NCBI GenBank assembly: GCA_002269645.1
Contig: NIVC01000067.1
Span: forward strand, 372,001 to 436,000
DNA length: 64,000 nt
Reading direction: 5' to 3'
From: Macrostomum lignano
Lineage: Eukaryota
A model generated the notes under the pieces. The model worked only from the letters and a program-made list of their open reading frames with translations, was not told the DNA's origin and did no database searches. This document shows positions 18,623 to 59,600 of this stretch, piece by piece. Position 1 is the first letter of the stretch; each line of letters starts with the position of its first letter. Both the position numbers and the translations under genes were made by a program.

Positions 18623-18669
<47 letters not shown>

Positions 18670-28300: not shown

Positions 28301-28377
28301 CATCGACGTTGGCTTCAACGATCTCGTCGCTGTCAAAGGTGATCATAAACGCCTCGGCCTGCTTGGGCGGCGGCGGC

Positions 28378-28408
<31 letters not shown>

Positions 28409-41615: not shown

Positions 41616-42612
41616 GTTAACAATAGAGGATGCTACGAGTACAACAGGGGTGCTGAAGAGTACAGCGAATTACAGCGAATTACAGCGAATTACAGGTGAT
41701 TCAGTACAGAAACTGTATCGTACGACTTTCGAATAAGTTTTTAGAAGTGAAAATTAATTAGGCTTGGAATCATGTCCCTTTTTACTACTCACGTTAGTAG
41801 CAAAGTATATTTTTGTAAACAATATTAAACTGTATTTTATATTTTGGTATGCAATAATTTGTACAGTAGGAGCCGGGCCAACACCAATCAGTCAGGGCAG
41901 AGCTCTGTGTTGAAATTGCTTTGATGAAGCCAGAAACAGCATCTATAAACAGAAGCCCTAACAGGTTCGGACCAAAGGATATCGCACAAAATCTTCGATT
42001 TTAAGCTGGCTAGAATAGTAAGTAAAACCTTTACGTTTATTTACGAGTATTTGCATTTTCTTTTACCTGACTGACTGATCATTGATTGAGTCTATTAAAG
42101 AAATTCTTTGAAATTCCTTTTGCATCTATATGTGTATATAGCTTCTATATTTATCTGGATAAGCGCCAGCAAGCGTTATTATGGGATAAGTCGTTAGCCT
42201 GTGTACTTTGTTCCCAATAAAAGCTGGGGAGATTTTAAAACCAAGAGGCTGAGAAGTCACTCTGTAATTGAATCTTAGCTCATCGCCCCGATCTGCTCAA
42301 AGCCCCCCTACTGGGCCTCCGGGCAAGTAACGACCGTTTTTTCTTTGAGCCGCTAGTTCTGGGTTTTTTAAAACTCGACTACTTCACGGACACTCCGGCG
42401 CGGTCGCTTGGGTAATTTGAGCGTCAAAGAAATTTCTAGATCGCTTAGTGAAGTCTGAAGTGCTAGCGGGCCCGCTTTAACGAGTCCACTCAGTCAGTTC
42501 CTCGTCTAGTCTGCGCTCAAGCAAATTCACTAAGCTATCAACGGTAGGCTTAGAAAGTTAACTGTCCATAAATATCGGAAATGAAAATTTCTACAGCCGT
42601 ACGCCTCAAAAC

Positions 42613-43808
42613 CTACAGTGCAGTGGCACCCGAAACCTTACAGTGGCTCCCCAAGCCCAACAGTGGCGCCCCAAGCCCAACAGTGGCACCCCAAACACTA
42701 CAGTGGCGCCCCAAGCCCAACAGTGGCACCCCAAACCCTACAGTGGCGCCCCAAGCCCAACAGTGGCACCCCAAACACTACAGTGGCGCCCCAAGCCCTA
42801 CAGTGGCGCCCCCAAACTCTACAGTGGCGCCCCAAACTCTACAGTGGCGCCCCAAACCCTACAGTGGCGCCCCCAAACCCTACAGTGGCGCCCCAAGCCT
42901 ACAGTGGCGCCCCAAACCCTACAGTGGCGCCCCAAACTCTACAGTGGCGCCCCAAACCCTACAGTGGCGCCCCAAACCCTACAGTGGCGCCCCAAATTCT
43001 ACAGTGGCGCCCCAAACCCTACAGTGGCGCCCCAAACCCTACAGTGGCGCCCCAAGCCTACAGTGGAGCCCCCAAACCCTACAGTGGCGCCCCCAAACTC
43101 TACAGTGGCGCCCCAAACCCTACAGTGGCGCCCCAAACCCTACAGTGGCGCCCCAAGCCTACAGTGGAGCCCCCAAACCCTACAGTGGAGCCCCAAACCT
43201 TACAGTGGCGCCCCCAAACTCTACAGTGGCGCCCCAAACCCTACAGTGGCGCCCCAAACCCTACAGTGGCGCCCCAAGCCTACAGTGGCGCCCCAAACCC
43301 TACAGTGGCGCCCCAAACCCTACAGTGGCGCCCCAAACCCTACAGTGGCGCCCCAAACTCTACAGTGGCGCCCCAAACCCTACAGTGGCGCCCCAAACCC
43401 TACAGTGGCGCCCCAAGCCTACAGTGGAGCCCCAAACCCTACAGTGGCGCCCCCAAACTCTACAGTGGCGCCCCAAACCCTACAGTGGCGCCCCAAACCC
43501 TACAGTGGCGCCCCAAACTCTACAGTGGCGCCCCAAACCCTACAGTGGCGCCCCAAGCCTACAGTGGAGCCCCCAAACCCTACAGTGGAGCCCCAAACCT
43601 TACAGTGGCGCCCCCAAACTCTACAGTGGCGCCCCAAACCCTACAGTGGCGCCCCAAACCCTACAGTGGCGCCCCAAGCCTACAGTGGAGCCCCAAACCT
43701 TACAGTGGAGCCCCAAACCTTACATTGGCGCCCTCAAACCCTACAGTGGCGCCCCAAGCCCAACAGTGGCGCCCAAGCTCTACAGTGGCGCCCTCAAACC
43801 TTACAGTG
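42613..43808. repeat. 20-21-bp minisatellite (TACAGTGGCGCCCCAAACCC)
   Basis: Bracketed by a 17-bp direct repeat (see findings). Confidence 0.95.
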
Positions 43809-44252
43809 CGCCAAGCAAATTCACTAAGTACCCTAAGTTCCCCTCAACCCTAACGTAGCAGTGATGCCCCCCGAACCCCAAACTAGCTGCAGTGCTCATA
43901 AGAAGTAAATAAACAACTTGTACCCAGTAAAAGTACACACCAGCCTTGGAAAGTTGCAGGTTGCAGTCAGCTATTCCATTCGACCTGACAGACAGTATTG
44001 AATAATCAGCAATGCAGATCAAGGGTTGAATACACCAGCATTGCAGCATTAACCCTTCTCTCCTGATCCCTACCTCGGGGGCACAGCTCGAAGTCCCCCT
44101 CAGCTGGCAGCGGCAGCCCCCGGGAGCCAGCAGTCTCAGCTGGAGATTCGCTAATCAAAGGCAACATCTGATTGGCCGCTGCTCCACTCGGCCCTCTGAG
44201 GCAAAAGACCGCTCTGGCTTCGGAGGCCAGCGCCCTCTGGGTGCACTGAGCC

Positions 44253-45317
44253 ATGGCGGAGGCTGCTGACGAAGCTGCGGCACCTCTGCCGCTGATCTGC
44301 CTGACCGTCTCCGTGCTGGTCACCTGCTGTCACGTGATCTTGGCGACGTCAATCTCGGAGCTGCGCCGCTTGTACAGCTGGCCGCTGCTGTCGCCACTGT
44401 CGCTGCACCTGGCCAATGGCGCCTCCCAGCTGGTCGCCTGCGGCGCGGAGCGGCTCGGTGCCGGCTGGACCGACTGGCTGACGGCGGCCAACGCCAGCGC
44501 TCACCTGTTCGGGCTGCTCACCGCGTCCTGGACTCTCAGCATCGCCGTGAGCTTCTGGCGACAGCGCCGACGGTGGCGGCGCCACTTGCACGCATCGGCT
44601 GCTGATGTCGACGCCAGCTGGCTGTCGAAGCTGCGCCGCCTGGCCATCAGCGCCCTGTTCGCCGCTCCCTTCCTGGCCGCGGGCCTGGCGGGCGGTCCGG
44701 CCGGCCTGGACACGGCGCGCTACAACGCCAGCTTGCCGCAGATTTTCCGGCGCCAGCGGAACTGCAGCGAGCAGCAGCAGCAGCAGCAGCCGGCGCCGCA
44801 GGCGGTGGACGAGCTGCAGCGGGCAGCGATGTCGCACGCGTGGCTGCTCTTCCTGCCTGCCCTGCTGGCCTACGGGCTGCAGCTGGCGCCGCTGCTGCCC
44901 GCCTCCGCAGCAGCCTCGGCAGCGAAGCTGGACGCGCCGGAGCTGTCAGCGCCGACCATCGCCGCCGCCTGCGTCCGCTGCCGGGCGCTGTCAAAGTTCG
45001 CCGCCACCAGCCTGGCGGTGCAGGCGAGCGGCCTGCTGTCCGTGGCCCGGTTCCGCGGCTGCGACGGCCCCTGCCTGTGGTACGCGCACTACATGCTGCA
45101 GGCGCTGCAGTCAATCTTCATCGCGGTCAGCTGCCTGCTGTCCCGCGGCCCTGTCGAGGCGCTGGCTGACGCCTGCAGCGGCGGCGGCGGCCTCGGCGGG
45201 CTGGGCAGGGAGGACACCAAGCTGGAGTCCGGCCTGGGCCGCCTGGCCGCGGCGATGAACTCGCGAAAGTCGCCTGGAGGTCAGCGGCGCTGCGCCTACC
45301 ATAGAGCGGGCCGCTAG
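44253..45317 (+). CDS. Intronless 7TM protein, secretin/adhesion/Methuselah-like GPCR, with no ectodomain
   Basis: 354-aa GC-rich ORF with seven hydrophobic segments. TM1-ELRRL loop, TM3 AHLFGLLTASWTLSIAVSFWR and TM7 LQALQSIFIAVSCLL resemble family-B motifs (recalled HYFxLxxFxW and LQGxFIF). An in-frame TGA lies two codons upstream of the ATG. Confidence 0.65.
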   Translation: MAEAADEAAAPLPLICLTVSVLVTCCHVILATSISELRRLYSWPLLSPLSLHLANGASQLVACGAERLGAGWTDWLTAANASAHLFGLLTASWTLSIAVSFWRQRRRWRRHLHASAADVDASWLSKLRRLAISALFAAPFLAAGLAGGPAGLDTARYNASLPQIFRRQRNCSEQQQQQQPAPQAVDELQRAAMSHAWLLFLPALLAYGLQLAPLLPASAAASAAKLDAPELSAPTIAAACVRCRALSKFAATSLAVQASGLLSVARFRGCDGPCLWYAHYMLQALQSIFIAVSCLLSRGPVEALADACSGGGGLGGLGREDTKLESGLGRLAAAMNSRKSPGGQRRCAYHRAGR

Positions 45318-45439
45318 AGGCCAGGGCAGAGAACAGGGGGACATGTCACCTCCTGTAAAAGCTTTGCGGGGGAATTGCCAATGCTTTGTCCCCCCCAACC
45401 CCACCTTGTGACCCGTTGTAGTAATCAATAATTTTTCTT

Positions 45440-45850
45440 CAGGGCGCCAAAATAAGTGTCTGCGGCGCTAAAATGAGTGCCTGCGGCGCCAAAATGAGTG
45501 GCTGCGGCGCCAAAATGAGTGCCTGCGGCGCCAAAATGAGTGCCTGCGGCGCTAAAATGAGTGGCTGCTGCGGCGCCAAAATGAGTGGCTGCGGCGCCAA
45601 AATGAGTGCCTGTGGCGCTAAAATGAGTGTCTGCGGAGCAAAAATGAGTGCCTGCAGCGCCAAAATGAGTGCCTGCAGCGTTAAAATGAGTGCTTGCGGC
45701 GCTAAAATGAGTGTCTGCGGCGCAAAAATGAGTGCCTGCAGCGCCAAAATGAGTGCCTGCAGCGCCAAAATGAGTGCCTACGGCGCCAAAATGAGTGCCT
45801 GCGGCGCTAAAATGAGTGGCTGCGGCGCTAAAATGAGTACCTGTGGCGCC
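45440..45850. repeat. 21-bp minisatellite (AAAATGAGTGCCTGCGGCGCC)
   Basis: Lies downstream of the 7TM stop. Confidence 0.92.
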
Positions 45851-47169
45851 CAAAGGAGCGCTGACAACACGAATCTCAAAATAATGGAAATTTAGGAATT
45901 TAGTCATGTACATGTTGAATTCTTGGTTTTGTCCCCCCACCATAAAATCCATGGCGACGCCCCTGGCTGCCCACGTGGATCGGCCTTCCTCAGCCTTAGT
46001 TATGGTGGAAGGATGGCATCGCTTATGTTAGTCTGGCTGGCTCAACCATCTTGGATGAACTGCTTTTGTTACGTTTAAGAAAAACTTTTGGTCACGCGCG
46101 TTCTTCGCCTCTAAACATAGCAACGACCATCGAGCCTTCAGCCAATCAATTTTTGAAGGCCGATTCGAATTGGAACTCATCGTTATTTTGCACGCATTCA
46201 ATGCTTCGTTTTAAACTTTTTATTCTCATTTCGCCAGAAGCAGCGGTATTGACCGCTCGCCCAAGAGCTCACTGCAAGTTTTCGGCCCCAGGGCATCAGA
46301 TCAGATCGCGGTGCGGTCAAGGACCTCAGATGAATGAGAACTGGGATTAACCAGTAGCTATCAGCTTCCCTCGCACTTGTATACCCAGGAGAATATTGCA
46401 TGCATAGCTGGCTACTGTTTTTGCTGTTCCAAAAGGCGCAAAAGTACATGCAGACATGCAGAGTAAATTTTAAGCGAAAATTCTAAAGTTCTGCAGCATT
46501 AATATTCAGGGATATTCAAGGATATTAATAAATACGAGCGTATGAATGAATATTTATCGATATTAATGGACACCAATGGGTATTTTTGTAGACTCTGATT
46601 TGTAAACTGAGTTGAAGCGAGTGAGAAGACATCGTGAACTCTAAACTCTGGAGCATTGAACTCTCAGTGATCTGTATAGAGAGGCAGCACTTTAGCATGT
46701 CCCTGGTCTCTTGTCTCGAGTCAGTGGAATTCTGCCCCTGGGGCTCGCGGTAGCAGCAAAGCGAGTTAACCCCTCGGTTACTAGGAGAAGAAGATCGGAT
46801 ACGGAAGCTTCAATCCGCTCTTTGCTGGAGCAAATCACCGACCTGTACGCCTCATCTGTGCTCAAAAAAGTACACATTGAATGCTCTGGAATTTCCTCAA
46901 GTCAGCCAGTGCTCATGCGAGGGACAAAGCCTGTCCAGGCCTTCAAATCTGCATCTTATTAATACACCTGTGCTGGCCAATCTGCCTGCTGGCTCTCTCA
47001 GGGGACTGGAGTGGCCTCTGCAGCTGCCAGCACAGCAGATGAGAAGTCGAAATTACTTTGTAAGTAAACAGATTCACCTGACCGATTCAGGACCAATTTC
47101 CGAAGCGATTTTCTGAAACCAAATTGATTTCGTGAGGAAGTTCAGCGTCAAGGTACGGGTTGAATATGA

Positions 47170-47720
47170 AATAAATATGATGAACATGACAGATACATGA
47201 ATGAACATGATAAACATGATATAAACATGAATGAACATCATACACATGAGAGAAACATGAGAGAACATGAGAACAGAACAGAAAAATAATAGAAACATGA
47301 GAGAACATGAGAACAGGACAGAAAAATGAGAGAAACATGAGAAAACATGAGAACAGGACAGAAAAATGAGAGAAACATGAGAAAACATGAGAACAGGACA
47401 GAAAAATGAGAGAAACATGAGAAAACATGAGAACAGGACAGAAAAATGAGAGAAACATGAGAGAACATGAGAACAGGACAGAAAAATGAGAGAAACATGA
47501 GAGAACATGAGAACAGGACAGAAAAATGAGAGAAACATGAGAGAACATGAGAACAGGACAGAAAAATAATAGAAACATGAGAGAACATGAGAACAGGACA
47601 GAAAAATGAGAGAAACATGAGAGAACATGAGAACAGGACAGAAAAATAATAGAAACATGAGAGAACATGAGAACAGGACAGAAAAATGAGAGAAACATGA
47701 CATAGACGTGAGAGAACATG
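47170..47720. repeat. 40-bp purine-rich minisatellite (GAGAAACATGAGAGAACATGAGAACAGGACAGAAAAATGA)
   Basis: Direct reading. Confidence 0.92.
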
Positions 47721-48798
47721 CAAAACATCCAAGAATACATACAAGAACACTAGAGGTCATCAGATATTGAAGCACAAATAAACTCGGTTCCCAGAAGCAA
47801 TATAACTGCTTCGACAATCTTAAGCCACGAATTATGCCCAGTTTAAGCATGCTCATCTCGAAAGATGTTTGGTGGATAGAGTCAGTCCGACAGAGCTGCT
47901 CTGTACTGCCGCGGGCTCATAATTTTGAGGATTTTACAGTGCAGAGCTGACCTGACAGCGGGGACACGGGCCCAGATGCAGACACGCAAGGGTGTCCCAA
48001 TTAAAAACTGCAATCGTGTCCGCAAGTGCGCCAGCATTCGCAACACTTGGAGTTTTTATCGCCTTCCCGGGAGTTTGCGCCAAGGCCAAAAAGGATTTAT
48101 GGCCCATAAAACAAGAAATTTAAAAAGCTAGGAAGAGAAATATTGCCAGTATTTTTATTTCGGATTGTAGAGGATTCACGAATACTGAGCATATTTGGCG
48201 ATGGTATTTATAATTACTCACTTAATTACTCACTCACTTACTCCCTTACTTACTTACTTACGACTCGCTTACCTAATGAATTACTTACTTACTTACTCAC
48301 TCATACTTTCTTACTCTCTGACTTACTCATTTACTTACTTACTTACTCACTTACTCATTTTCTTACTCACTATACATGCCTTACAAGACACAAAAGCCGA
48401 GCAGTCGCCAAAGCAACGCCCTCAGTCATTCTGGTCACGCACTCACATAAACTGAAGCTCATTATTCGATCTAATTAAGACTGAATTGCTACTCCAAGTT
48501 TCCAATCCTTTGCAGTAAATTTGATTGAAAGAGATCTTGGCGCAGCACGAATGCCAGAGTCATGGCGACCTTGGCAGCGCAATGAATAGCATAGCTTGGC
48601 AAGTTCATCTGATACAAGCTACTACAAGTAGTTGCTGCTACTAAACGAAGGCATAAAAGACCTTGAAATGTATTCGATTGTACTGTCGGACTAAGTCTTA
48701 GCCCTTGGTTACTATGCTGGATTATTAAAAGGAATTCGAAAATACAGGATCCGCGGCCAAAACCGACATGTCACGATCGGCCCAGCTTGTCCACCCAA

Positions 48799-50525
48799 TC
48801 AGAGCTCGTCGGCGTCGTGCTCCGCCGGCCGCCGCCACAGCTGCCGGCAGTCGTCGCCTTCCAGCCGGACAGAGCAGGCGAAGCCGCCGCCGCTCGGAGA
48901 CAGCCGCTGGCCGGCACCGAGGCCGGCGGCCCGGCGGCGCAGTTCCAGCCGGCCGCGGTAGCGCCAGGCGCCGGCGGCCGAGCCGCAGTAGCTTAGCATC
49001 AAGCGCTGGCCTCTGGCCTCCTCGGACGGCCAGCTGAGCCGCCAGGCCTCCGTGACCGCCTGGCCGACCTTGGTGAGGCCCAGCAGCAGGGTGCCGTTCT
49101 CCGGCCAGGCCGCCACCACCCGGCGCTGCAGCTTCACTGGCGAGCCTTCGAATAAGAAGCCGCCGGTGGTCTGGCCGGCCTCGGCCTCCAGCAGCTCGCC
49201 GCGGCACGGATGACAGTCGTGGAACGGGTGGCCGCCGCGGACGGCCAGCCACAAGCCATCGGCTTCGGCCAGAGTGGCTGGGGGCCCCAGGCCTGCGAGC
49301 ATGATGAATAAAGTAAATTTAACCTGTTAGATGGCACCAAACATACTGGGACAACCTCACGAGACGCCTAATGATACACCTAATGAGGCGCCTAATGAAG
49401 CGTCTAATGGGTAACACAACTAGACACCTAATGAGACACCCAATGAGACACCTAATGAAATGCCTAAAGAGACACTAATGAGCACATAATGAGACACCTG
49501 ATGAGATACCGAATGAGGCACCTATTGAGACACTAATAAGGACCTAATGAGACGCCTAATGAGACACCTAATGAGACACCTAATGAGACGCCTAATGAGA
49601 CACCTAATGAGACACCCAATGAGACGCCTAATGAAATGCCTAAAGAGACACTAATGAGCACCTAATGAGACACCTGATGAGATACCGAATGAGGCACCTA
49701 TTGAAACACTAATGAGCACCTAATGAGACACCTGATGAGATACCGAATGAGGCACCTATTGAGACACTAATAAGGACCTAATGAGACGCCTAATGAGACG
49801 CCTACTAATGAGACACCTAATGAGGCACCTAATCAGACACCTAATGAGGCACCTAGTGAGACAACCTAATGAGGTGCCTAATGAGATGCATGATGAGACA
49901 CCTAATGAGACGCCTAATGAGATGCATAATGAGACACCTAATGGGATGCCTAATGAGATGCATAATGAGACACCTAATATGGAACCTACAAAGACACCTA
50001 ATGAGACGTCAAATGAGGCACCTAATGAAACGTCAAATGAGACACCTAATAAGACATCTAATGAGATCAAGACAATCTTTAAAATCTCTAATTCTTTATG
50101 CTTCAAGTTTAGACCTGCAGCTGTTCAGGCCGGCATTCGTCCTGATCCTCATCCCAATCCTTCACCCCGTCCGCCGCCGCAGGCGGACTCAACTCGACGC
50201 AGTTGTGCTCAGTCACGGCGCAGGTGAGAAAGTCGGTGAGCAGTTGCTCAGCCCGGCAGCGGTAGAGGCAGGCGGCAGAGCAGGTGTCGCCGGAGCCGCC
50301 GCAGCTGTGCAGGCAGGTGAGACAGGCGCGGCAGTCGGAGTTCACAGCGCAGGCGTAGGACTGGCCGGGGCAGCTGTAGGCCATGCACCAGGCGTCGAGC
50401 GAGTGGCCCGCCGCTGCGGCCGCCGAACGCAGCGCGTCGATGGCAGCAGCGTTGGCCGGCGGCGCTGCCAGGTGTAGAAGCGGCAGGGCCAGAAGCAGAA
50501 ATTGTTGCACAGCAAATTTCCCCAT
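48799..50525 (-). CDS. Secreted violaxanthin de-epoxidase-like (VDE/VDL/VDR family) protein: signal peptide, Cys-rich domain and lipocalin domain
   Basis: Exon 50525-50115 encodes signal peptide MGKFAVQQFLLLALPLLHLAAPPANA, then Cys spacing x4,x6,x5,x5,x3,x6,x3,x15,x6 ending FLTCAVTEHNCV. Exon about 49323-48799 encodes ADGLWLAVRGGHPFHDCHPC, TEAWR, LSYCG, WRYRG and EGDDC. The phase-0 acceptor at 49324-49326 fits the donor; a pyrimidine-richer acceptor near 49293 would need phase 1, so the exact junction is unresolved. Confidence 0.75.
49360..50065. repeat. 12-bp minisatellite (CTAATGAGACAC) filling the VDE-like intron
   Basis: Direct reading. Confidence 0.92.
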
Positions 50526-50884
50526 TCTATACGAGTAAATAGGTGGAACTTTCGCTAGTGTAGAATTTCAATTTTAAATACGCTCTGCGCAAACATGAGC
50601 TGCGCTGGCGGACTCTTGGCACCGCAGAGATCAAATTCCAATATAATGAAGATAACGACGCTCGAATCCTTTGGTAGCAGAGCAGCGGGCTTGCTGTTGC
50701 AGAAACTATTAATAGCACCATAGAAATCTATTGCACCACTGGGACACTACTTACTGTGGTCGGATGGTCAAAGTCTAGTTGGCTGGTGGGTTTTTAATTT
50801 AAATAAGAGCGTATGTATGCATTTGTATTTTTGAATTTATGTAGATCAGCTGAATATTTTAGGGCTGATAGTATGGGGAGGGTT

Positions 50885-52460
50885 GACTGCTCAACCTAAG
50901 AATCTGCGATGGTGACTGCTCAACCTGGGGGTCCGGGAGGGTGACTGCTCAACCTGGGGGTCCGGGAGGGTGACTGCTCAACCTGGGGGTCCGGGAGGGT
51001 CACTGCTCAACCTGGGGGTCCGGGAGGGTGACTGCTCAACCTAAGAATCTGCGATGGTGACTGCTCAACTTGGGGGCCTGGGTGGGTGACTGCTCAACCT
51101 GGGGGTCCGGGAGGGTGACTGCTCAACCTGGGGGTCCGGAAGGGTGACTGCTCAACCTGGGGGTCCGGGAGGGTGACTGCTCAACCTAAGAATCTGCGAT
51201 GGTGACTGCTCAACTTGGGGGCCTGGGTGGGTGACTGCTCAACCTGGGGGCCTGGGTGGGTGACTGCTCAACCTGGGGGTCCGGGAGGGTGACTGCTCAA
51301 CCTGGGGGTCCGGGAGGGTGACTGCTCAACCTAAGAATCTGCGATGGTGACTGCTCAACTTGGGGGTCCGGGAGGGTGACTGCTCAACCTGGGGGTCCGG
51401 GAGGGTGACTGCTCAACCTGGGGGTCCGGGAGGGTGACTGCTCAACCTGGGGGTCCGGGAGGGTGACTGCTCAACCTAAGAATCTGCGATGGTGACTGCT
51501 CAACTTGGGGGCCTGGGTGGGTGACTGCTCAACCTGGGGGCCTGGGTGGGTGACTGCTCAACCTGGGGGCCTGGGTGGGTGACTGCTTAACCTGGGGGTC
51601 CGGGAGGGTGACTGCTCAACCTGGGGGTCCGGGAGGGTGACTGCTCAACCTGGGGGTCCGGGAGGGTGACTGCTCAACCTGGGGGCCATGGGTGGGTGAA
51701 TGCTCAACCTGGGGGTCCGGGAGGGTGACTGCTCAACCTGGGGGCCATGGGTGGGTGACTGCTCAACGTGGGGATCTGGGAGGTGACTGCTCAGCCTGAG
51801 GATCTGGGAAGGTGACTACTAAGCCTGAGGATCTGGGAAGGTGACTGCTAAGCCTGAGGATCTGGGAGGCTGGCTGCTCGGCCTGAGGTTCTGGGAGGGT
51901 GACTGCTCAACCTGGGGGTCCGGGAGGGTGACTGCTCAACCTGGGGGCCATGGGTGGGTGACTGCTCAACGTGGGGATCTGGGAGGTGACTGCTAAGCCT
52001 GAGGATCTGGGAGGCTGGCTGCTCGGCCTGAGGTTCTGGGAGGGTGACTGCTCAACCTGGGGGTCCGGGAGGGTGACTGCTCAACCTGGGGGCCATGGGT
52101 GGGTGACTGCTCAACGTGGGGATCTGGGAGGTGACTGCTAAGCCTGAGGATCTGGGAGGCTGGCTGCTCGGCCTGAGGTTCTGGGAGGGTGACTGCTCAA
52201 CCTGGGGGCCATGGGTGGGTGACTGCTCAACCTGGGGATCTGGGAGGTGACTGCTCAGCCTGAGGATCTGGGAAGGTGACTACTAAGCCTGAGGATCTGG
52301 GAAGGTGACTGCTAAGCCTGAGGATTTGGGAGGCTGGCTGCTCGGCCTGAGGTTCTGGGAGGGTGACTGCTCGGCCTGAGGATCTGGAAGGCTGGCTGCT
52401 CGGCCTGAGGTTCTGGGAGGGTGACTGCTCGGCCTCAGGATCTGGAAGGCTGGCTGCTAA
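50885..52460. repeat. 30-bp minisatellite (GTGACTGCTCAACCTGGGGGTCCGGGAGGG) with higher-order variants
   Basis: The right third changes to CTGAGGATCTGGGAGGCTGGC-type units. Confidence 0.95.
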
Positions 52461-53773: not shown

Positions 53774-56700
53774 CTAGGGTGACGAATCCGGAGACGAGAG
53801 GCCCAACAAATTTGGTGAGGTTTCCACAACTGGCCGAATATCCTGCAGCTGGACAGCATCGCCGTCCGTACCTGCGACATTGGCGGCGACATTATTAGCA
53901 ACGTCGGCAGCGACATTGGCGGCGACATCAGTAGCAACGTCGGCAGCGACATCATTGGCGACATCATTAGCAACGTCGGCAGCGACATCATTAGCGACGT
54001 CGGCAGCGACATCATTAGCGACGTCGGCAGCGACATCATTAGCGACATCATTAGCGACGTCGGCAGAGACACCATTGGCGACATCATTAGCGACATTGGC
54101 ACTATTTTCAGCGTCTCCCCGGTCGCTAACAGCAGCGACAACGTCGGCTGGCGGACCAGCAAATGTTGCCGGCAGTTGATGGGCCTGCGACAGAGGCGGG
54201 TAGTCGCGAAGGAATTCAGGAACGGAGGCGGCGGCAGCAAGCCGCTCCATATAAGGTAGCAGGTCGCGCAGCTCAGTGTCGGCCTGGTCGCCCACCCAGG
54301 TGTGCACCCGGATCTGCGGAGCAGACAGGGTCATGGTAATTCAAAGATGCAAACCATGAAGCCCAAATTTCAAAAATAATGAGATTTAGAACCTTAATTT
54401 TGACATATAATTCTAAAACATTTTAATCCGGATCTCAAATTATGATTAAATAAGGATCACAAGTCATCAAATTTAGAGCACCAATCAGCAAATGAAGGTA
54501 AAAAAAACAATAAATTCAGGTAACAATGATCAAGTCCAGGTCAGGACTCACCAAATTCAGCTCACAACTAATCAAATCCAGGTCACAAATCATCAAATCC
54601 AGGTCACAAATCATCAAATCCAGGTCACAAATCATCAAATTCAGGTCACAAATCACCAAATCCAGGTCACATACCATTAAATCCAGGTCACAAATCATCA
54701 AATGCAAGTCACAATTAAATAAATCCAGGTCACAAATAATCAAATCCAGGTCACAAATAATCAGATCCAGGTCAAAAATCATCAAACCCGGGTCACAAAT
54801 CATCTAATCTAGATCAAAATCATCAAATCCAGGTCACAAATCATTAAATCCGGGTCACAAATCATCAAATCCAGGTCACAAATCATCAGATCCAGGTCAC
54901 AAATCATCAAATCTAGGTCACAAATCATCAAATCCGGGTCACAAATAATCAAAATCAAGATTCTGAAACCTCGAAACCTAGGTCGAAATAAGATTATATA
55001 ATGATTCTGAAATCCAGATAGCACCAGACCCGAAAATTGAAAGAGATGAGAGCTTAAAGAACTACAGTTTTCTGTCTGTGAGCTTTCCAATCCAGATGAC
55101 TGTAAATCAAGCCAGCCAAGGACACGAACCGCATTCTCCGTATTGAACATGTAGGACGCGGGCGAATTATCAATGATAACGCAGCGGTCAACCGGCCGGC
55201 CCAGCTGGGCCAGGTCCTTCACGAAATTGTCGCAGTGAAGGACGCAGGACTCGCGAAACAGGCGGTGCTTGAATGTGGACCACCGGTCCAGACGGTCCGA
55301 CACGGGGTCTGCGTACTGCGGGTGAAAATATTACTGTTTAAAATAAGACTCTGGGAGAACGCGATCGCCAGTGACCCCGGGTTCGATTCCGCGCGTGGGG
55401 CCACATTAATTAGGGGCTTGAGCACTAATCAGCGGACAAAGGTTCTATTGAGAGCTAACGGTGCAAGAAATACCTTAGCGAGGCTGGCGGTGAAGAGCAC
55501 GCATTCGTACAGCTGGCCCATTCTTTCCAGGAATTCGTCCGCGTATGGCCGCTTCAACACGTACACCTGGTGCACCAGGCCTTCGATTTCAACGTCGATG
55601 ACAAAGTCCGGCTCATCGACGAACTGTTAGAAAAATTATATAGCGAGGTCGAGAGCTAATTTCAGGTCGAATATAAATGTTATTTTGAGGACCTGAAGGA
55701 CGTTTGCCCAGCAACTGAGGATCTGGGAGGATGGCCCAGCAACTGAGGATCTGGGAGGCTGACCCAGCAACTGACAATCTGGGAGGATGTTGGTTGAGCA
55801 ACTGAGGATCTGGGAGGATGGCTCAGCAACTGAAGATCTGGGAGGCTGGCCCAGCAACTGAAGATCTGGGAGGCTGACCCAGCAACTGAGGATCTGGGAG
55901 GCTGACCCAGCAACTGAGGATCTGGGAGGATGGCTCAGCAACTGAGGATCTGGGAGGCTGGCTCAGCAACTGACGATCTGGGAGGCTGGCCCAGCAACTG
56001 ACGATCTGGGAGGTTAGCCCAGCAACTGGGGATCTGAGAAGCTGGCCTAGCAACTGGGGATCTGAAAAGCTGGCCCAGCAACTGAGGATCTGGGAGGCTG
56101 GCCCAGCAACTGAGGATCTGGGAGGCTGGCCCAGCAACTGACGATCTGGGAGGTTGGCCCAGCAACTGGGGATCTGAGAAGCTGGCCCAGCAACTGAGGA
56201 TCTGGAAGGCTGGCCCAGCAACTGAGGATTTGGGAGGCTGGCCCAGCAACTGAAGAGTTGGGAGGCTGGCCCAGCAACTGACGATCTGAGAGTCTGGCCC
56301 AGCAACTGACGATCTGGGAGGCTGGCCCAGCAACTGACACTCTGGGAGGCTGGCCCAGCAACTGAGGATCTGGGAGGCTGGCCCAGTGGAAACCTGGTAG
56401 CAAAGCCAATGCCCAACCTTGAATGAGCTGTGCACCAGAGTTTCGTCCAGGTCAATAACAGCACAAATCTTATCGCCCAAGTCGGGATCTCGCGGTCCCA
56501 GCAGGTCGATAGAGAATGTCTGGCCATTCTGCCCGTGATGGTGATGATGGTGATGGTTGTGGTGCTGCTGTTGCTGCTGCTGTTGTTGGCGCCTCCTAGT
56601 GGACGAGCGCCGATTAAAGCAGAAGCAGCAAAGCAGCTCTCGAAGCGGCCGAGGCTTTGACGGCTCGTTGACAGTAACGACATCAACTGTTGGCCCATCT

Positions 56701-59600
56701 GTGTCGGCTTTTTCTGCCGGGTCCTGCACAATCGGACTGATGACCTCATCCGAAGCTGCTGCAGTATCACCTGGTGGTAAGCAAATCATAAGTTTTGGTC
56801 ATGTACCCTACCCGAAACCCATTTCTGGATAGTTTTTTGAATTTTCAAGATCCAAACCAAAATAGAAGACTTAATTTTATGGAAAATATCTGGGCACATA
56901 ATGTTATGAGTAGATAAAATGGCATTGATTAGATAGAACATGTAACAAGTTTGTTTTGTAAAAATTGTAAATTTAATGTAAAATACATGGCATTGTATTT
57001 GAATAGACTTACTATCACTTGTCCTAGCCCCCTCTCAATCTTAGTGAAGTGCATAGTGCTTGGCTGACTCCAAGCATCTGCCAAGTGGTGCAACACTTGG
57101 AATCGCAGGCAATCCTGTGCTGCCATCCCTTGCTACCCCCAGCTAGATAGAACCTTCTTTATGCTCAACCAAAGGGATCTTAGAGTAGTCAGCATGGCTG
57201 ACTTCATTTGCTATTACTTCCTCTAAGGCCAGGTACCTAAGGAGTAATGCTTTTTTGTAATTCAGACAGTACAATGCTAAGCAACTTATTTGCAACTGCC
57301 CAATTCTCACCAGGACCAGGCTCACTCACTTTGGGCCAAACCTGGTTTTCTCCAATATTTGCAGGCCTAAAAGCATACTATTGCTTGCCTGGTACCTCAG
57401 GGACATGGGATGATTTGAGTTCTTCCCTATCATTAGTGAGGAGGACCATACTAGAGGCAAGACCAGTGGGTCCCTTGAGCAACATCACTTTAATGGGAGT
57501 CCTTGGTTGCCAGGGCCTAGCAGAATGGGCGATCTCCCTTGCAAAGAATCTGTTCAAATTACAGTTTAATTAACAAATAATGTCATCACATTTACATAAT
57601 CATGTCTGGTGATGATAGACTGTTTGAGAGTCTAGCTGAGAATGACCAGAAGTTAAAGTTTCCCATTATTGATGCTGGTCAGCAACATCAAAGAAATTCG
57701 GAATAATGTGTCCACAGTCACCTGGTGTTATCTGTTGAAGGAGCTAATGGTGTTGGGGCAATGATTGAATGCTTGAGAAACTAGTTGAGGATGTGTAGCA
57801 GTTCAGGTTTGCCCATTATTGAAGCTTGATAAGAAAAACCTGACATAGTTACAAAAGGATGTCCATAGTCACCTGATGCTACCTGTTGAAGGTGCCGATA
57901 GTGTCAGGGTGATGAAAGAATGCCTAGGAGACTAGTTGAGGGTGTCTGACAATTAAGGCTTGAACACTGTTGAGGCTTAATGGGCAAAACTAGAGAAATT
58001 TATATCAGAGTGTTTATAGTCATTGCCTAGTATCATCTGCTGAAGGTGCCGATGGCATTGGGGTTATGACAGAATGTTCAAGAAACTAGCTGAGAATGTC
58101 TAGCCAGTTGAGGCTTGCCCATTATTGAAGCTTGATAAGAAAAATCTGACATATTTGCAACAGGATGTTCATAGTCACTTGGTGTCATCTGTTGAAGGTG
58201 CTGATGGTGTCAGGGTGATGACAGAATGCTTGAGAGACTAGCTGAGGATGTCCAGCAGTTGAGGCTTGCCCACTGTCAAGGCTTGATCAGCAAAACTAGA
58301 GAAATTTGCAACAGCATGTCCATAGTCACCTGGTACCACCTGTTGAAGGTCCAGAAGTTCCACCTGGACAAAAGCTAGTGACCAACAAAGTCAGAGCTGA
58401 TGCAGACACATGTGGTCAATGTGTTGATGAAATTTGGAGACTTGGCAAGGCTGCACTGAGGCGCAATGCTAATTGGCGCACAGGGGTATACTGAATACAC
58501 TGGCGCTTATAAGAAAAATGGGACTTTCTGGCAGAATTGTTGAATATCTCAATGGTCCTTAAGGCTGGTGACTTGATTCTTGTTTGAGAAGGTATGCAAC
58601 AAAAAGTTGGCCCATGTTCTTGAATTTCACATGCCTGTGTTGCTCTGTTCTGGCATAGCAAAAAAATTGTCAAGGGGGAAATCCCCCTTCTTGGTAGTTT
58701 GATCGGTGGAAAAATGGCTTGGTATTCTTACTATTAATGAAAATCTTAAACTTCTATTAATGGCAAAAGTGATATTTACTAATAAGCATTAATCTGTTAA
58801 TAGTAACAAAAATATAGGAAATTTACACTTTTTCCAAAACAGGTTTCATGATGCACTGTCTTTGCTTTTCTATCTTTTTAGCCAATAAAGAAAGGTCATC
58901 TAAGCAATTTATGTACTAAAAAGTAGCAAAAAATAAAAAAACTTGTATTTAAAATACTACTAAAAGTGAAAAAACAAGCTAAAAGTATTATTTACTTAAA
59001 ACTTGAAAGTCGTTTAATTAATAAAAAAATAAACATAAAAGTTGTTTCAAAGTACTATTTTTTTATAGGTATTATAGGCATAAGTATATAGATTGTATTA
59101 TAGTAGGCATATTAGAAAGTTTTGTAAGATTAGAAAAGAAGTAAATCAAAGTAATGCTCATGTGCAAGCAATAAAATTTTTTATTTATTATTTAAAGTTC
59201 ATAATTAATTAAGTTAAGATTTTGTTTTATTTGCATTATTATTAATATTAGAGATACTGTATTTATTAAATTTATTATTATTTGTTTCTGTTTATAAAAT
59301 TTTATTATTGCACCAATAATTTAAATTAGTTTTACTTATATATTATTTTCTAAAAAATAGACTTATCAAAGGGTCTGTTATTACTATATTAGTAAAAATA
59401 ATGCCAAATAATATCAAGCTCTAAGATTTCTTACCTTGGCCATGATTAGGCCTATTATTTGAATGTTCCATATTTGAAGCATCATTATTTGAAGAGGCTT
59501 TATTTTCAGGATTTGATTTTACTTCTAAATTAGGCCTCTCAACATCAGTTGAAACAAAGTCAGGGTCATTTACTTGTGTTATAATTGAAGAAATATCCAT
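53774..59600 (-). CDS. CTDSP: CTD small phosphatase (SCP/CTDSP, FCP1-like HAD phosphatase) with an Ala/Asp/Val/Asn-repeat C-terminal tail
   Basis: Exons 59600-59435 ([11 protein letters not shown]-terminus), 56770-56418 (LLCCFC; [18 protein letters not shown]), 55623-55474 ([13 protein letters not shown]...[11 protein letters not shown]), 55315-55130 ([10 protein letters not shown]...RLFRESC...IIDNSPASY) and 54313-53774 ([14 protein letters not shown]...TAG). All phases join, and the DxDx(T) catalytic motif is intact. Confidence 0.93.
54515..54950. repeat. 21-bp intronic minisatellite (AAATCCAGGTCACAAATCATC)
   Basis: Direct reading. Confidence 0.92.
55700..56390. repeat. 28-bp intronic minisatellite (GGCCCAGCAACTGAGGATCTGGGAGGCT)
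   Basis: Direct reading. Confidence 0.93.
57600..58350. repeat. Old, diverged tandem repeat of about 150 bp in SCP intron 1
   Basis: Anchor CA(T/C)AGTCA(C)CTG...TGAAGG recurs near 57714, 57864, 58015, 58170 and 58321. Confidence 0.75.

What the first reader, a model, noticed from the sequence alone, without database searches (positions are those of the whole stretch)
48799..50525. Animal gene encoding a secreted violaxanthin de-epoxidase-like (Cys-rich plus lipocalin) protein
Seen: signal peptide, then ten Cys spaced x4,x6,x5,x5,x3,x6,x3,x15,x6 ending FLTCAVTEHNCV, then DGLW, GGHPFHDCHPC, TEAW, SYCG, WRYRG and GDDC. Recalled knowledge: the plant VDE N-terminal domain has spacing x4,x6,x5,x5,x3,x8,x3,x14,x6 ending FNECAVSRKKCV, and its lipocalin has NGKW, GLNPTFDAFDC, QDDW, YYRG, WDGYGG and DNTC. 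The Tyr of the YYRG motif is kept, the catalytic Asp position appears to be Glu, and the Glu-rich tail is absent. VDE/VDL/VDR enzymes are known for xanthophyll chemistry in plants and algae. This copy has a spliceosomal intron filled with a host-type minisatellite, host-like GC-rich codons and metazoan neighbours, so it is integrated rather than contamination. Inference: an uncharacterised animal carotenoid-binding or carotenoid-modifying protein, possibly handling dietary algal xanthophylls, from ancient retention or horizontal transfer.
Basis: partly seen in the sequence, partly recalled or inferred. Interest (0 to 1): 0.8.

Follow-up and report, generated by a model that had tools for sequence, protein, structure and literature searches.

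The report
Flatworm gene for VDE-like lipocalin
The flatworm Macrostomum lignano carries in its own chromosomes a gene for a secreted relative of the plant and algal xanthophyll enzyme violaxanthin de-epoxidase, a family that reviews still treat as confined to photosynthetic organisms; the copy in this window has a one-base frameshift.

Summary
The homology is real. The spliced protein passes Pfam PF07137 (VDE) at 54 bits against a cut-off of 25.7. A profile of its relatives hits the Arabidopsis VDE lipocalin crystal structure at E=9e-29. An AlphaFold model shows a helical Cys-rich domain followed by an eight-strand lipocalin barrel.

The window is 100% identical to Macrostomum lignano contig NIVC01000067.1, gene BOX15_Mlig021800g1. 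It is not contamination: the contig is 1.13 Mb, there are three collinear copies beside a CTD-phosphatase gene, and the intron carries a minisatellite.

This copy lacks one base 4-12 nt into exon 2, so the annotated product is a truncated 189 aa. Two other copies encode 301 aa.

The protein belongs to a distinct clade of short proteins with a signal-like N-terminus. That clade also occurs in bivalves, amphioxus, a chytrid and a vampyrellid, and separates from long N-terminally extended, presumably algal forms with 100% NJ bootstrap. The pocket residues follow the VDL/VDR pattern: Glu at Asp177, with Trp179, Tyr198 and Asp114 kept. The Glu-rich tail and the histidines I checked are absent.

Function is inferred only. 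The most likely role is opening or tautomerising epoxy or allenic xanthophylls from dietary diatoms. Whether the gene arrived by horizontal transfer or is ancient is unresolved. Databases already auto-label it, but no paper found here studies the animal genes.

The parts
50115..50525 (-). Exon 1 (411 nt, 137 codons): start ATG, hydrophobic signal-like N-terminus, Cys-rich domain and linker up to ...DECRPEQLQ.
   Evidence: ORF and translation. Identical to exon 1 of NCBI PAA91987.1 / BOX15_Mlig021800g1.
50451..50525 (-). Probable signal peptide (about aa 1-25, MGKFAVQQFLLLALPLLHLAAPPAN). The cleavage site is not determined.
   Evidence: Kyte-Doolittle 9-mer maximum of 2.87 at FLLLALPLL. All clade members have a short hydrophobic N-terminus 20-50 aa before the first Cys, against 57-320 aa in the long, presumably algal forms. 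No dedicated predictor was run.
50199..50387 (-). VDE-type Cys-rich domain (aa 47-109). Ten canonical Cys at 47, 52, 59, 65, 71, 75, 82, 86, 102 and 109, plus lineage-specific C68 and C90. Predicted to be helical.
   Evidence: Cys positions. Pfam VDE profile positions 3-124 align to aa 46-177. Nine of these Cys are invariant and C47 nearly invariant among 20 relatives. AlphaFold places helices at 45-106 with pLDDT 79-95.
50133..50135 (-). Codon of Cys131, conserved in the short animal-type clade but absent from the long forms. Its position shows that exon 1 runs to the 50114 donor.
   Evidence: C131 is nearly invariant in A1. It is present in group A and absent in groups B and C. The alternative model P0002 (donor 50188) deletes it.
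49293..50114 (-). Spliceosomal intron (822 nt, GTCTAA...CTCGCAG, GC 0.42).
   Evidence: The same junction is annotated in all three genomic copies. The annotation they belong to was built with RNA-seq guidance (PMC5730564).
49361..50066 (.). Intronic minisatellite, 12-nt unit GAGACACCTAAT, about 59 copies, 74% matches.
   Evidence: Tandem Repeats Finder. The intron has the same length in copy L002 and a shorter array in L001, where the intron is about 610 nt.
49280..49288 (-). Frameshift site: minus-strand run GGGGCCCCC, one base shorter than in the two intact copies.
   Evidence: Window against L001 and against L002. It is the only indel in 4.3 kb at 99.77% identity. Exon 1 plus exon 2 is 905 nt, which leaves a remainder of 2 on division by 3.
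48799..49292 (-). Exon 2 (494 nt). The lipocalin-domain reading frame (LGPPATLAEADGLW...GDDC...DADEL, stop) is open, but it is shifted by one base (in the +1 register) relative to exon 1.
   Evidence: Outside the G/C run the CDS is identical to intact copy L002. A family profile hits PDB 3CQN at E=9.3e-29. AlphaFold gives eight strands at 150-257.
49134..49292 (-). Frameshifted tail of the annotated 189-aa product (AWGPQPLWPKPMACGW...SKARQ, stop).
   Evidence: P0003 sequence. The gene range in L003 is 1392 nt. Translation.
49293..49323 (-). Segment that would become coding (VKFTLFIMLA) if the upstream AG, giving an exon start at 49323, were used. This is the only canonical GT-AG pairing found that restores a full-length frame (311 aa) in this copy while keeping Cys131 and the 50114 donor.
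   Evidence: Enumeration of GT/AG pairs. The same AG exists in L001 and L002, where using it would break the frame. No RNA evidence was available.

Best explanation
The window holds one of three genomic copies of a genuine, host-integrated, two-exon Macrostomum lignano gene, BOX15_Mlig021800g1.

The intact form is 301 aa and is encoded by two sister loci. It is a secretory-pathway protein with three parts:
- a short signal peptide;
- the VDE-type helical, disulfide-rich N-domain;
- a lipocalin barrel.

It belongs to the VDE family (PF07137), but to a separate clade of short proteins with a signal-like N-terminus, no transit-peptide-like extension and no Glu-rich tail. Every member of that clade whose source organism is named comes from a heterotroph that lives on algae: bivalves, amphioxus, a chytrid parasite of an alga, and a vampyrellid amoeba. 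The clade has its own extra cysteines, C131 and C240.

The cavity residues follow the VDL/VDR pattern, with Glu for Asp177 and with Trp179, Tyr198, Tyr208 and Asp114 kept.

Inferred mechanism, not shown: the barrel binds the end ring of a diet-derived epoxy or allenic xanthophyll. In this diatom-fed worm the likely substrates are violaxanthin, diadinoxanthin and fucoxanthin. In an oxidising and probably acidic compartment (gut lumen or endolysosome), the Glu/Tyr pair would protonate and open the 5,6-epoxide. That would give a VDL-like tautomerisation rather than the ascorbate-driven two-electron de-epoxidation of chloroplast VDE.

The copy in the window carries a 1-nt deletion 4-12 nt into exon 2. 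It is therefore either a very young pseudogenised duplicate or a consensus error in a G/C run. As annotated it yields only the Cys-rich domain.
For: Homology:
- Pfam VDE at 54.4 bits against a cut-off of 25.7.
- Profile of 20 relatives against PDB 3CQN/3CQR at E=9.3e-29, followed by weaker lipocalins.
- AlphaFold mean pLDDT 74.8 and pTM 0.70, with the helical Cys-rich domain and eight strands.
- Foldseek returns lipocalins, including 3CQN, with TM-score normalised to the target of 0.55.

Identity and integration:
- 100% identity to NIVC01000067.1, a 1.13 Mb contig.
- 20 kb collinear with L001 at 91-95% identity, including the NIF phosphatase neighbour.
- 99.77% identical to L002.
- M. lignano has a recent whole-genome duplication and a redundant DV1 assembly (PMC7053086; PMC5730564).

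Clade:
- Named relatives are from Branchiostoma, Crassostrea/Magallana, Saccostrea, Pinctada, Tegillarca, Quaeritorhiza and Leptophrys.
- The animal genes lie on 16-92 Mb scaffolds beside animal genes.
- The short clade separates from the long forms in 100% of 200 NJ bootstraps.
- The signature cysteines are shown.

Residues:
- D163, E219, W221, Y239 and Y249 align to AtVDE D114, D177, W179, Y198 and Y208.
- The Glu-177 state is stated for VDL and VDR in PMC13181403.

Plausibility of substrate:
- M. lignano is fed the diatom Nitzschia curvilineata.
- Bivalves and tunicates convert fucoxanthin by allene-to-acetylene change and epoxide opening (PMC6949322).
- VDL1 and VDL2 catalyse epoxide-to-allene and acetylene-to-allene tautomerisations.
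Against: - There is no functional, expression or localisation data for any member of the clade.
- The M. lignano protein is the most divergent member. It scores 54 Pfam bits against 105-145 for its clade, and only the first half of the profile aligns.
- dN/dS between the homeologous copies is 0.81, based on only 10 differences. That cannot be told apart from neutral drift.
- One of the three copies is frameshifted.
- In oysters and ark clams the Asp177-equivalent residue is Ser, so an acid catalyst is not universal in the clade.
- Ligands other than carotenoids are possible for a lipocalin.
- The signal peptide and the acidic compartment are inferred.
- Most clade members come from unnamed transcriptome or metagenome contigs, so the label 'heterotroph clade' rests on five named lineages. 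Two of those, the chytrid and the vampyrellid, could carry prey or host sequence.
Confidence: 0.55

Rival explanations
1. It is a non-catalytic lipocalin. The family has been retained in algivores as a secreted carrier or sequestering protein for carotenoids or other hydrophobic dietary molecules, in the manner of crustacyanin or apolipoprotein D, with no epoxide chemistry.
For: - The lipocalin fold matches binding proteins about as well as it matches VDE in Foldseek.
- The profile also hits sandercyanin, ApoD and crustacyanin at E of 1e-4 to 5e-3.
- The Asp177-equivalent is Ser in oysters and Tegillarca.
- The VDE histidines checked (H121, H124, H168, H174) and the Glu-rich tail are missing.
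Against: - The polar cavity residues Asp114, Glu177 and Tyr198 and the aromatic Trp179 and Tyr208 are conserved across most of the clade and in M. lignano. The 2026 review reads that conservation as a sign of enzymatic activity in VDL and VDR.
- The disulfide-rich N-domain, which is essential for VDE activity, is fully kept.
Confidence: 0.25
2. It is a decaying relic in M. lignano. The gene was acquired or inherited long ago, is no longer under selection after the whole-genome duplication, and the window copy is simply the first of three to break.
For: - The window copy is frameshifted.
- dN/dS is 0.81 between homeologs.
- It has the lowest Pfam score in the family, and the C-terminal half of the barrel is not matched by the profile.
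- Composition is Ala/Gly/Arg-rich, driven by GC3 of 0.8-0.9.
Against: - Two copies keep a full 301-codon frame.
- All 10 canonical Cys, the clade-specific Cys and every conserved pocket residue are retained despite only about 25-30% identity to any relative.
- The gene models come from an annotation built with RNA-seq guidance.
- Ten substitutions are too few to estimate dN/dS.
Confidence: 0.15
3. The frameshift is an assembly artefact, and the window copy is in fact an intact 301-aa gene identical to Mlig021800g2.
For: - The difference lies exactly at a G/C homopolymer junction: GGGGCCCCC against GGGCCCCCCC.
- Mlig_3_7 is a Canu assembly of PacBio reads polished with Pilon. In blocks that are 99.8% identical, short reads map ambiguously.
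- The rest of the CDS is identical to the intact copy.
- The ML2-based model P0002 shows the same run, but ML2 was built from the same PacBio data, so it is not independent.
Against: It is the only indel in 4.3 kb of otherwise well-polished sequence, a stretch that includes a 700-bp minisatellite of identical length. It is accompanied by a base substitution, which is not typical of a simple homopolymer miscall.
Confidence: 0.4
4. It is contamination from the diatom food (Nitzschia) or another alga that was assembled into the flatworm genome. This is how the only earlier animal VDL sequence, an oyster EST, was explained.
For: - Worms are cultured on diatoms.
- Coesel et al. 2008 dismissed the oyster EST in this way.
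Against: - The gene sits inside a 1.13 Mb contig, between flatworm-type genes and minisatellites.
- Three collinear copies match the known genome duplication.
- The intron and codon usage are host-like.
- The protein falls outside the long, presumably algal group.
- Homologues lie on chromosome-scale scaffolds of four other animals.
Confidence: 0.01

Closest known systems
Violaxanthin de-epoxidase (VDE/NPQ1, Arabidopsis; lipocalin domain PDB 3CQN/3CQR)
   Same: - Same two-domain core: a 10-Cys N-domain with near-identical spacing, followed by a lipocalin barrel.
- Pfam PF07137 is passed.
- GxW, D114, C118, W179, Y198, G200 and Y208 are conserved.
   Different: - Asp177 is replaced by Glu.
- His121, His124, His168 and His174 are absent.
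- There is no Glu-rich C-terminal domain.
- There is a short signal peptide instead of chloroplast and lumen targeting.
- Extra cysteines are present (C131, C164, C240, and two at the C-terminus).
- The host is an animal.
- Ascorbate-dependent de-epoxidation has not been shown.
VDE-like proteins VDL1/VDL2 of stramenopile, haptophyte and alveolate algae (violaxanthin to neoxanthin, and diadinoxanthin to allenoxanthin, tautomerases)
   Same: - Glu at position 177 with W179 and Y198 kept.
- All ten N-domain Cys are kept.
- The Glu-rich tail is reduced or absent (PMC13181403).
- The long homologues that score next best to the M. lignano protein are N-terminally extended PF07137 proteins of this general type.
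   Different: - VDLs are reported only from chromalveolate algae and act in plastid carotenoid biosynthesis.
- The flatworm protein lies in a separate short clade with 100% NJ bootstrap, has clade-specific cysteines, and comes from an organism that, as far as known, makes no carotenoids.
- The long sequences in my tree carry no names, so their identity as VDL is presumed.
VDE-related protein (VDR) of plants, green algae and diatoms
   Same: - Glu at 177 and Tyr198 kept.
- Function unknown.
- No Glu-rich tail.
- The chytrid member of the short clade was evidently named through a VDR match, giving the misnomer 'Vitamin D3 receptor'.
   Different: - VDRs are about 520-590 aa and chloroplast-localised.
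- Coesel 2008 reported that they lack the PF07137 signature, whereas the flatworm protein passes it.
- A third group of long sequences, with Pro at the D117 position, Gln at 121 and Tyr at 124, is distinct from the short clade.
Uncharacterised VDE-domain proteins of bivalves and amphioxus (for example Magallana XP_034326102, Pinctada FSP39_008929, Tegillarca KUTeg_011027, Branchiostoma Hypp7811)
   Same: - Same architecture and size (260-290 aa).
- Same hydrophobic signal-like N-terminus.
- Same clade-specific Cys pattern, CCC..YCG..C..C.
- Chromosomal location in an alga-feeding animal.
   Different: - Only 25-30% identical to the flatworm protein.
- The bivalve genes examined (Pinctada, Tegillarca) are intronless, and amphioxus has three introns at other positions.
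- Oysters have Ser at the Asp177 position.
- Orthology with the flatworm gene is not resolved; bootstrap support is below 20%.
Animal ligand-binding lipocalins (crustacyanin, apolipoprotein D, sandercyanin)
   Same: Eight-strand barrel with the GxW motif and weak profile similarity. Some of these proteins bind carotenoids or bilins.
   Different: They have no Cys-rich N-domain and no VDE-type cavity residues, and the similarity is much weaker (E of 1e-4 to 1e-2, against 1e-28 for VDE).

Membership tests
VDE family (Pfam PF07137, VDE lipocalin domain) | Profile score above the curated gathering threshold | tested here: met
   54.4 bits against 25.7, E=1.6e-14, aa 46-177 aligned to profile positions 3-124. 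The intact copy P0004 scores 55.4 bits. Only the first half of the profile aligns.
VDE family (Pfam PF07137, VDE lipocalin domain) | N-terminal domain with ten conserved cysteines in the VDE spacing | tested here: met
   Cys at 47, 52, 59, 65, 71, 75, 82, 86, 102 and 109 give spacing 4,6,5,5,3,6,3,15,6. AtVDE C9 to C72 gives 4,6,5,5,3,8,3,14,6, from the numbering in PMC13181403. Nine of the ten are invariant in 20 relatives and C47 is nearly invariant.
VDE family (Pfam PF07137, VDE lipocalin domain) | Lipocalin barrel homologous to the solved VDE domain | tested here: met
   Family profile against 3CQN/3CQR at E=9.3e-29. AlphaFold gives eight strands. Foldseek hits to lipocalins include 3CQN. 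A single-sequence phmmer search against the PDB did not find it.
Canonical xanthophyll-cycle VDE (EC 1.23.5.1) | Catalytic Asp177 | tested here: not met
   Glu219 aligns to Asp177.
Canonical xanthophyll-cycle VDE (EC 1.23.5.1) | Tyr198 (ascorbate contact) and Trp179 (substrate contact) | tested here: met
   Y239 and W221. Residue roles are taken from PMC13181403.
Canonical xanthophyll-cycle VDE (EC 1.23.5.1) | Glu-rich C-terminal domain of about 100 aa | tested here: not met
   The protein ends 16 aa after the last Cys. The Glu fraction of the last 80 residues is 0.07.
Canonical xanthophyll-cycle VDE (EC 1.23.5.1) | AtVDE histidines 121, 124, 168 and 174. Their role in the pH switch is recalled from the older VDE literature, not taken from a paper read here. 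| tested here: not met
   The aligned residues are E170, E173, L210 and A216.
Canonical xanthophyll-cycle VDE (EC 1.23.5.1) | Thylakoid-lumen targeting and ascorbate-dependent de-epoxidation at acid pH | not testable with these tools
   The organism has no plastid, and there are only about 46 aa before the first Cys. Activity needs a biochemical assay.
VDL (VDE-like tautomerases of chromalveolate algae) | Glu at 177 with W179 and Y198 kept, ten Cys kept, and the Glu-rich tail reduced or absent | tested here: met
   judged against the criteria stated in PMC13181403.
VDL (VDE-like tautomerases of chromalveolate algae) | Phylogenetic placement inside the VDL1 or VDL2 clade | tested here: inconclusive
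   The short clade that contains the flatworm protein is separated from eight long, N-terminally extended homologues in 200 of 200 NJ bootstraps. Those long sequences carry no names, and no labelled VDL1, VDL2 or VDR sequences could be included.
VDL (VDE-like tautomerases of chromalveolate algae) | Epoxide-to-allene or acetylene-to-allene tautomerase activity on xanthophylls | not testable with these tools
   Requires an enzyme assay or heterologous expression.
VDR (VDE-related) | Long (about 520-590 aa) chloroplast protein, reported to lack the PF07137 signature | tested here: not met
   The protein is 301 aa and passes PF07137. Criteria are from Coesel 2008.
Short secreted animal-type VDE-domain clade (unnamed; bivalves, amphioxus, chytrid, vampyrellid) | Length of 250-330 aa, hydrophobic N-terminus directly before the Cys-rich domain, and extra Cys at the C131 and C240 positions together with C164, C167 and C277 | tested here: met
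   The pattern CCCEWYCC is shared by P0001 and most clade members and is absent from the long groups. See also alignment A1 and the 100% bootstrap for the clade.

The most novel reading that the evidence does not exclude
The short secreted VDE-like proteins of algivorous animals (flatworm, bivalves, amphioxus) may be the unidentified enzymes that remodel dietary algal xanthophylls. The reactions would be epoxide opening and allene/acetylene interconversion of fucoxanthin, diadinoxanthin, violaxanthin and peridinin end groups, the transformations catalogued for decades in marine invertebrates. On this reading they form a non-plastid branch of the VDE family. That branch would either predate the plastid enzymes or have spread among algae-eaters by repeated eukaryote-to-eukaryote gene transfer.
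Probability: 0.25. Interest if true: 0.8.

Novelty: new variant of a known kind. Interest (0 to 1): 0.6.

Why it matters
VDE, VDL and VDR are treated as proteins of photosynthetic eukaryotes. A 2026 review places VDL only in chromalveolates and VDR only in photosynthetic organisms. The single animal sequence noticed in 2008 was written off as algal contamination.

This locus, together with chromosomal homologues in bivalves and amphioxus, shows that animals do encode the fold. The animal-type proteins form a clade with their own cysteine signature and a short signal-like N-terminus.

That supplies concrete candidate genes for a long-standing gap in marine carotenoid biochemistry. Filter feeders convert fucoxanthin and related pigments through epoxide and allene chemistry, and the reviews read here name no enzyme for these steps. 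M. lignano offers RNAi and transgenesis for testing this, and it eats a diatom.

It also bears on the origin of the xanthophyll-cycle enzymes. Coesel et al. proposed that the Cys-rich domain came from the heterotrophic host lineage.

Tried and rejected
- Single-sequence phmmer against the PDB found only spurious WD40 hits. The family profile was needed.
- The search for homologous proteins with the M. lignano protein, and then with an alignment led by it, returned almost only M. lignano. A trimmed alignment led by the oyster sequence recovered more bivalves but few other taxa.
- The listing of cluster members on the long homologues gave no organism names, so groups B and C could not be labelled as VDL or VDR.
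- Shared intron positions were tested as evidence for vertical descent among animals. None is shared: the bivalve genes are intronless, and the nearest amphioxus intron lies 8 residues away from the flatworm one.
- The NJ bootstrap placement of M. lignano within its clade is unresolved. The best partner appears in under 20% of replicates and Branchiostoma in 8%. No maximum-likelihood program was available.
- The gene model P0002 (donor 50188), which keeps the frame, was rejected because it deletes the clade-conserved Cys131.
- dN/dS between copies rests on 10 differences, too few to be informative.
- Literature searches for the gene IDs, for PF07137, and for VDE together with Macrostomum found nothing on the animal genes. 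One broad search was wasted.
- Pfam scans of ORFs at 60-64 kb and of several repeat-derived ORFs gave no hits. I therefore make no claim of a retroelement there.
Full report
**What is in the sequence**

The feature lies on the minus strand.
- Exon 1 (50525-50115, 411 nt) starts at ATG. It encodes a hydrophobic N-terminus (MGKFAVQQFLLLALPLLHLAAPP...), a cysteine-rich segment and a linker that ends ...DECRPEQLQ.
- A GT..AG intron follows (50114-49293, 822 nt, GC 0.42). It is largely filled by about 59 copies of the 12-nt unit GAGACACCTAAT.
- Exon 2 (49292-48799) carries an open frame that reads ...LGPPATLAEADGLWLAVRGGHPFHDCHPC...TEAW...SYCG...WRYRG...GDDC...DADEL and then a stop.

The ten canonical cysteines (47, 52, 59, 65, 71, 75, 82, 86, 102, 109) have the quoted spacing.

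**Is it more than chance?**

Yes.
- The spliced protein passes Pfam PF07137 (VDE) at E=1.6e-14, 54.4 bits against a gathering score of 25.7.
- An exhaustive phmmer scan of 1.84 billion representative proteins found 97 relatives at E<=1e-3. The best outside Macrostomum reached E=1.9e-13 at about 30% identity.
- A profile of 20 of those relatives hits the crystal structure of the Arabidopsis VDE lipocalin domain (3CQN/3CQR) at E=9.3e-29. Ordinary lipocalins (sandercyanin, ApoD, crustacyanin) follow at E of 1e-4 to 1e-2.
- An AlphaFold2 model built on that alignment has mean pLDDT 74.8 and pTM 0.70. It shows a helical Cys-rich domain (helices 45-106, pLDDT 79-95) followed by eight beta-strands (150-257).
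- Foldseek against the PDB returns lipocalins throughout, including 3CQN with a TM-score normalised to the target of 0.55.

**Whose genome, and is the gene integrated?**

The region is 100% identical to Macrostomum lignano assembly Mlig_3_7, contig NIVC01000067.1 (1.13 Mb). There the gene is BOX15_Mlig021800g1, protein PAA91987.1.

Two further genomic copies exist:
- Mlig021800g2 on NIVC01000995.1 (locus L002) is 99.77% identical to the window over 4.3 kb.
- Mlig011564g1 on NIVC01001700.1 (locus L001) is 91-95% identical. It is collinear with the window over at least 20 kb, including the upstream NIF/CTD-phosphatase gene.

This fits the recent whole-genome duplication and the redundancy of the DV1 assembly (PMC7053086; PMC5730564). 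Exon GC3 (0.79-0.90) matches neighbouring ORFs. Contamination from the diatom food can be excluded.

**The flaw in this copy**

In L001 and L002 the two exons join in frame and give a 301-aa protein.

In the window, exon 2 is one base short. The minus-strand run at 49280-49288 reads GGGGCCCCC, against GGGCCCCCCC in L002 and GGGGCCCGCC in L001. With the annotated junction the product is therefore the 189-aa P0003. That is the Cys-rich domain plus a frameshifted tail ending at 49134.

It is the only indel in 4.3 kb between the window and L002. However, it sits at a G/C homopolymer junction in a PacBio/Canu assembly polished with Pilon. I therefore cannot decide between a very young real frameshift and a consensus error.

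The UniProt model A0A1I8G4Z2 (P0002, 276 aa) restores the frame with an upstream donor at 50188. That choice deletes Cys131, which is conserved throughout the clade, so I reject that model.

An upstream acceptor, giving an exon start at 49323, would restore the frame in this copy only, by adding VKFTLFIMLA. No RNA data were available to test it.

The Mlig_3_7 annotation was built from RNA-seq-guided transcript assemblies. This is indirect evidence that the exon junction is real. I saw no read-level evidence for this gene.

**Relatives and the clade**

The relatives fall into three groups.

| Group | Length | N-terminus | Distinguishing features | Pfam bits |
|---|---|---|---|---|
| A | 250-330 aa | Short and hydrophobic, directly before the Cys-rich domain | No Glu-rich tail; extra cysteines at positions 131 and 240 (the latter replaces Arg199 of AtVDE) | 105-145 |
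| B | 340-670 aa | Long extension | T or N at the 199 position | 214-248 |
| C | 400-600 aa | Long extension | Pro, Gln and Tyr at AtVDE positions 117, 121 and 124 | 84-97 |

The flatworm protein belongs to group A. Every group A member that carries an organism name is from a heterotroph:
- Branchiostoma lanceolatum;
- Crassostrea/Magallana gigas and angulata (once named by NCBI 'violaxanthin de-epoxidase, chloroplastic-like');
- Saccostrea cucullata, Pinctada imbricata and Tegillarca granosa;
- the chytrid Quaeritorhiza haematococci (mis-named 'Vitamin D3 receptor', evidently from 'VDR');
- the vampyrellid Leptophrys vorax.

The animal genes lie on 16-92 Mb scaffolds beside ordinary animal genes. 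In an NJ analysis of 258 columns, group A separates from eight group B sequences in 200 of 200 bootstraps. Bivalves cluster at 81-93%. The position of M. lignano inside group A is unresolved, with no partner above 20%.

Gene structure does not help. The Pinctada and Tegillarca genes are intronless, amphioxus has three introns, and none coincides with the flatworm intron. Ancient retention with many losses and repeated transfer among algae-eaters therefore both remain open. What is weakened is a transfer specific to Macrostomum from a plastid-type algal gene.

The caveats are that most group A sequences are unnamed transcriptome or metagenome contigs, and that groups B and C could not be labelled as VDL or VDR.

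**Residues and likely mechanism**

Aligned to the 3CQN sequence, the flatworm protein keeps several AtVDE residues:

| AtVDE residue | Flatworm residue |
|---|---|
| Trp103 (GxW motif) | W152 |
| Gly108 | G157 |
| Asp114 | D163 |
| Cys118 | C167 |
| Trp179 | W221 |
| Tyr198 | Y239 |
| Gly200 | G241 |
| Tyr208 | Y249 |
| Asp177 | E219 (replaced by Glu) |

His121, His124, His168 and His174 are not kept, and there is no Glu-rich tail.

According to PMC13181403:
- Asp177 is the proton donor to the epoxide.
- Tyr198 contacts ascorbate.
- Trp179 stacks on the carotenoid.
- Glu at 177 with Tyr198 kept is the state in all VDL and VDR proteins.
- VDL1 tautomerises violaxanthin to neoxanthin, and VDL2 converts diadinoxanthin to allenoxanthin.

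It is the VDL/VDR signature.

M. lignano is raised on the diatom Nitzschia curvilineata. Bivalves and tunicates are known to convert dietary fucoxanthin by allene-to-acetylene change and epoxide opening (PMC6949322).

My best inference is that the intact protein is secreted into an oxidising, probably acidic compartment. There it would bind an epoxy or allenic xanthophyll end group in the barrel, and the Glu/Tyr pair would open or tautomerise it.

The steps that are shown are the fold, the conserved residues, genomic integration and the clade. The signal-like N-terminus is seen in the sequence but was not run through a predictor. The steps that are inferred are the compartment, the substrate, and catalysis as opposed to simple binding.

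Points against:
- The flatworm sequence is the most divergent in the family, at 54 bits with only half the profile aligned.
- Oysters have Ser at the 177 position.
- dN/dS between homeologs is 0.81, based on ten differences.

**Comparison with what is known, and novelty**

By every sequence and fold criterion tested, this is a member of the VDE superfamily. It fails the features tested for the canonical xanthophyll-cycle enzyme other than Tyr198 and Trp179. It resembles VDL in its pocket, but it lies in a separate clade.

Databases already auto-annotate it as a 'VDE lipocalin domain-containing protein'. One clam genome paper lists a VDE gene family (PMC5499747).

The specialist literature still treats the family as confined to photosynthetic organisms. 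It dismissed the only animal sequence noticed earlier as contamination (PMC2483416; PMC13181403). No paper found here studies the animal genes.

I rate it a new variant of a known kind and of moderate to high interest. It supplies concrete candidate genes for animal xanthophyll remodelling in an organism where RNAi and transgenesis are available. The function is untested, and the copy in this window is broken as assembled.

Noticed in passing
window 53774-56789 (-): Multi-exon gene for an NIF / CTD small phosphatase-like protein (Pfam PF03031, E=8.7e-15 on the exon at 54809-55303; [12 protein letters not shown] motif in the exon at about 56300-56400). Its introns are filled with minisatellites. 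It is the conserved upstream neighbour of the VDE-like gene in the paralogous locus L001.
   Followed up: partly
window 38350-38742 (-): An exon-like ORF matches the C-terminal part of ChaC-like gamma-glutamylcyclotransferase (PF04752, E=8.7e-16).
   Followed up: partly
window 44253-45317 (+): A GC-rich 354-codon ORF (GC3 0.89) with several hydrophobic stretches and no Pfam hit. It is conserved at about 95% identity in the paralogous locus L001 (15270-17923), so it is probably a real lineage-specific gene.
   Followed up: partly
window 9151-9974, 19514-20352, 22639-24451, 24912-26432, 42581-43858, 45425-45952, 47074-47856, 50876-51500: Dense minisatellite arrays produce long spurious ORFs in several frames at once. 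An example is the 29/145-nt repeat directly upstream of the VDE-like gene. This agrees with the reported 15% simple and tandem repeat content of the M. lignano genome.
   Followed up: partly
P0005 (UniProt A0A1I8IR09, 883 aa; ML2 annotation): This is a fused gene model. It begins inside the NIF phosphatase, contains the VDE-like Cys-rich motif at residue 263, and is named as an HTH_48 (transposase) domain protein. It is almost certainly an annotation artefact of the older assembly.
   Followed up: no
P0010 (NCBI KAJ3084678.1, Quaeritorhiza haematococci): The chytrid homologue (Pfam VDE, 144 bits) is deposited under the name 'Vitamin D3 receptor'. This is evidently a wrong expansion of the abbreviation VDR (VDE-related).
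   Followed up: partly
L004 6001-6786 (Pinctada), L005 6001-6816 (Tegillarca), L006 6001-8820 (Branchiostoma): The two bivalve VDE-like genes examined are single-exon genes on chromosome-scale scaffolds. The amphioxus gene has four exons. Intronless genes in intron-rich bivalve genomes are compatible with retroposition or horizontal acquisition.
   Followed up: partly
window 18164-19387 (-) and 27069-28484 (-): Large GC-rich ORFs rich in poly-Gln, poly-Ala and poly-Pro, with no Pfam match. They may be exons of low-complexity nuclear proteins.
   Followed up: no
window 35765-36163 (-): This ORF has a weak FHA-domain match (PF00498, E=0.001, just below the gathering score).
   Followed up: no
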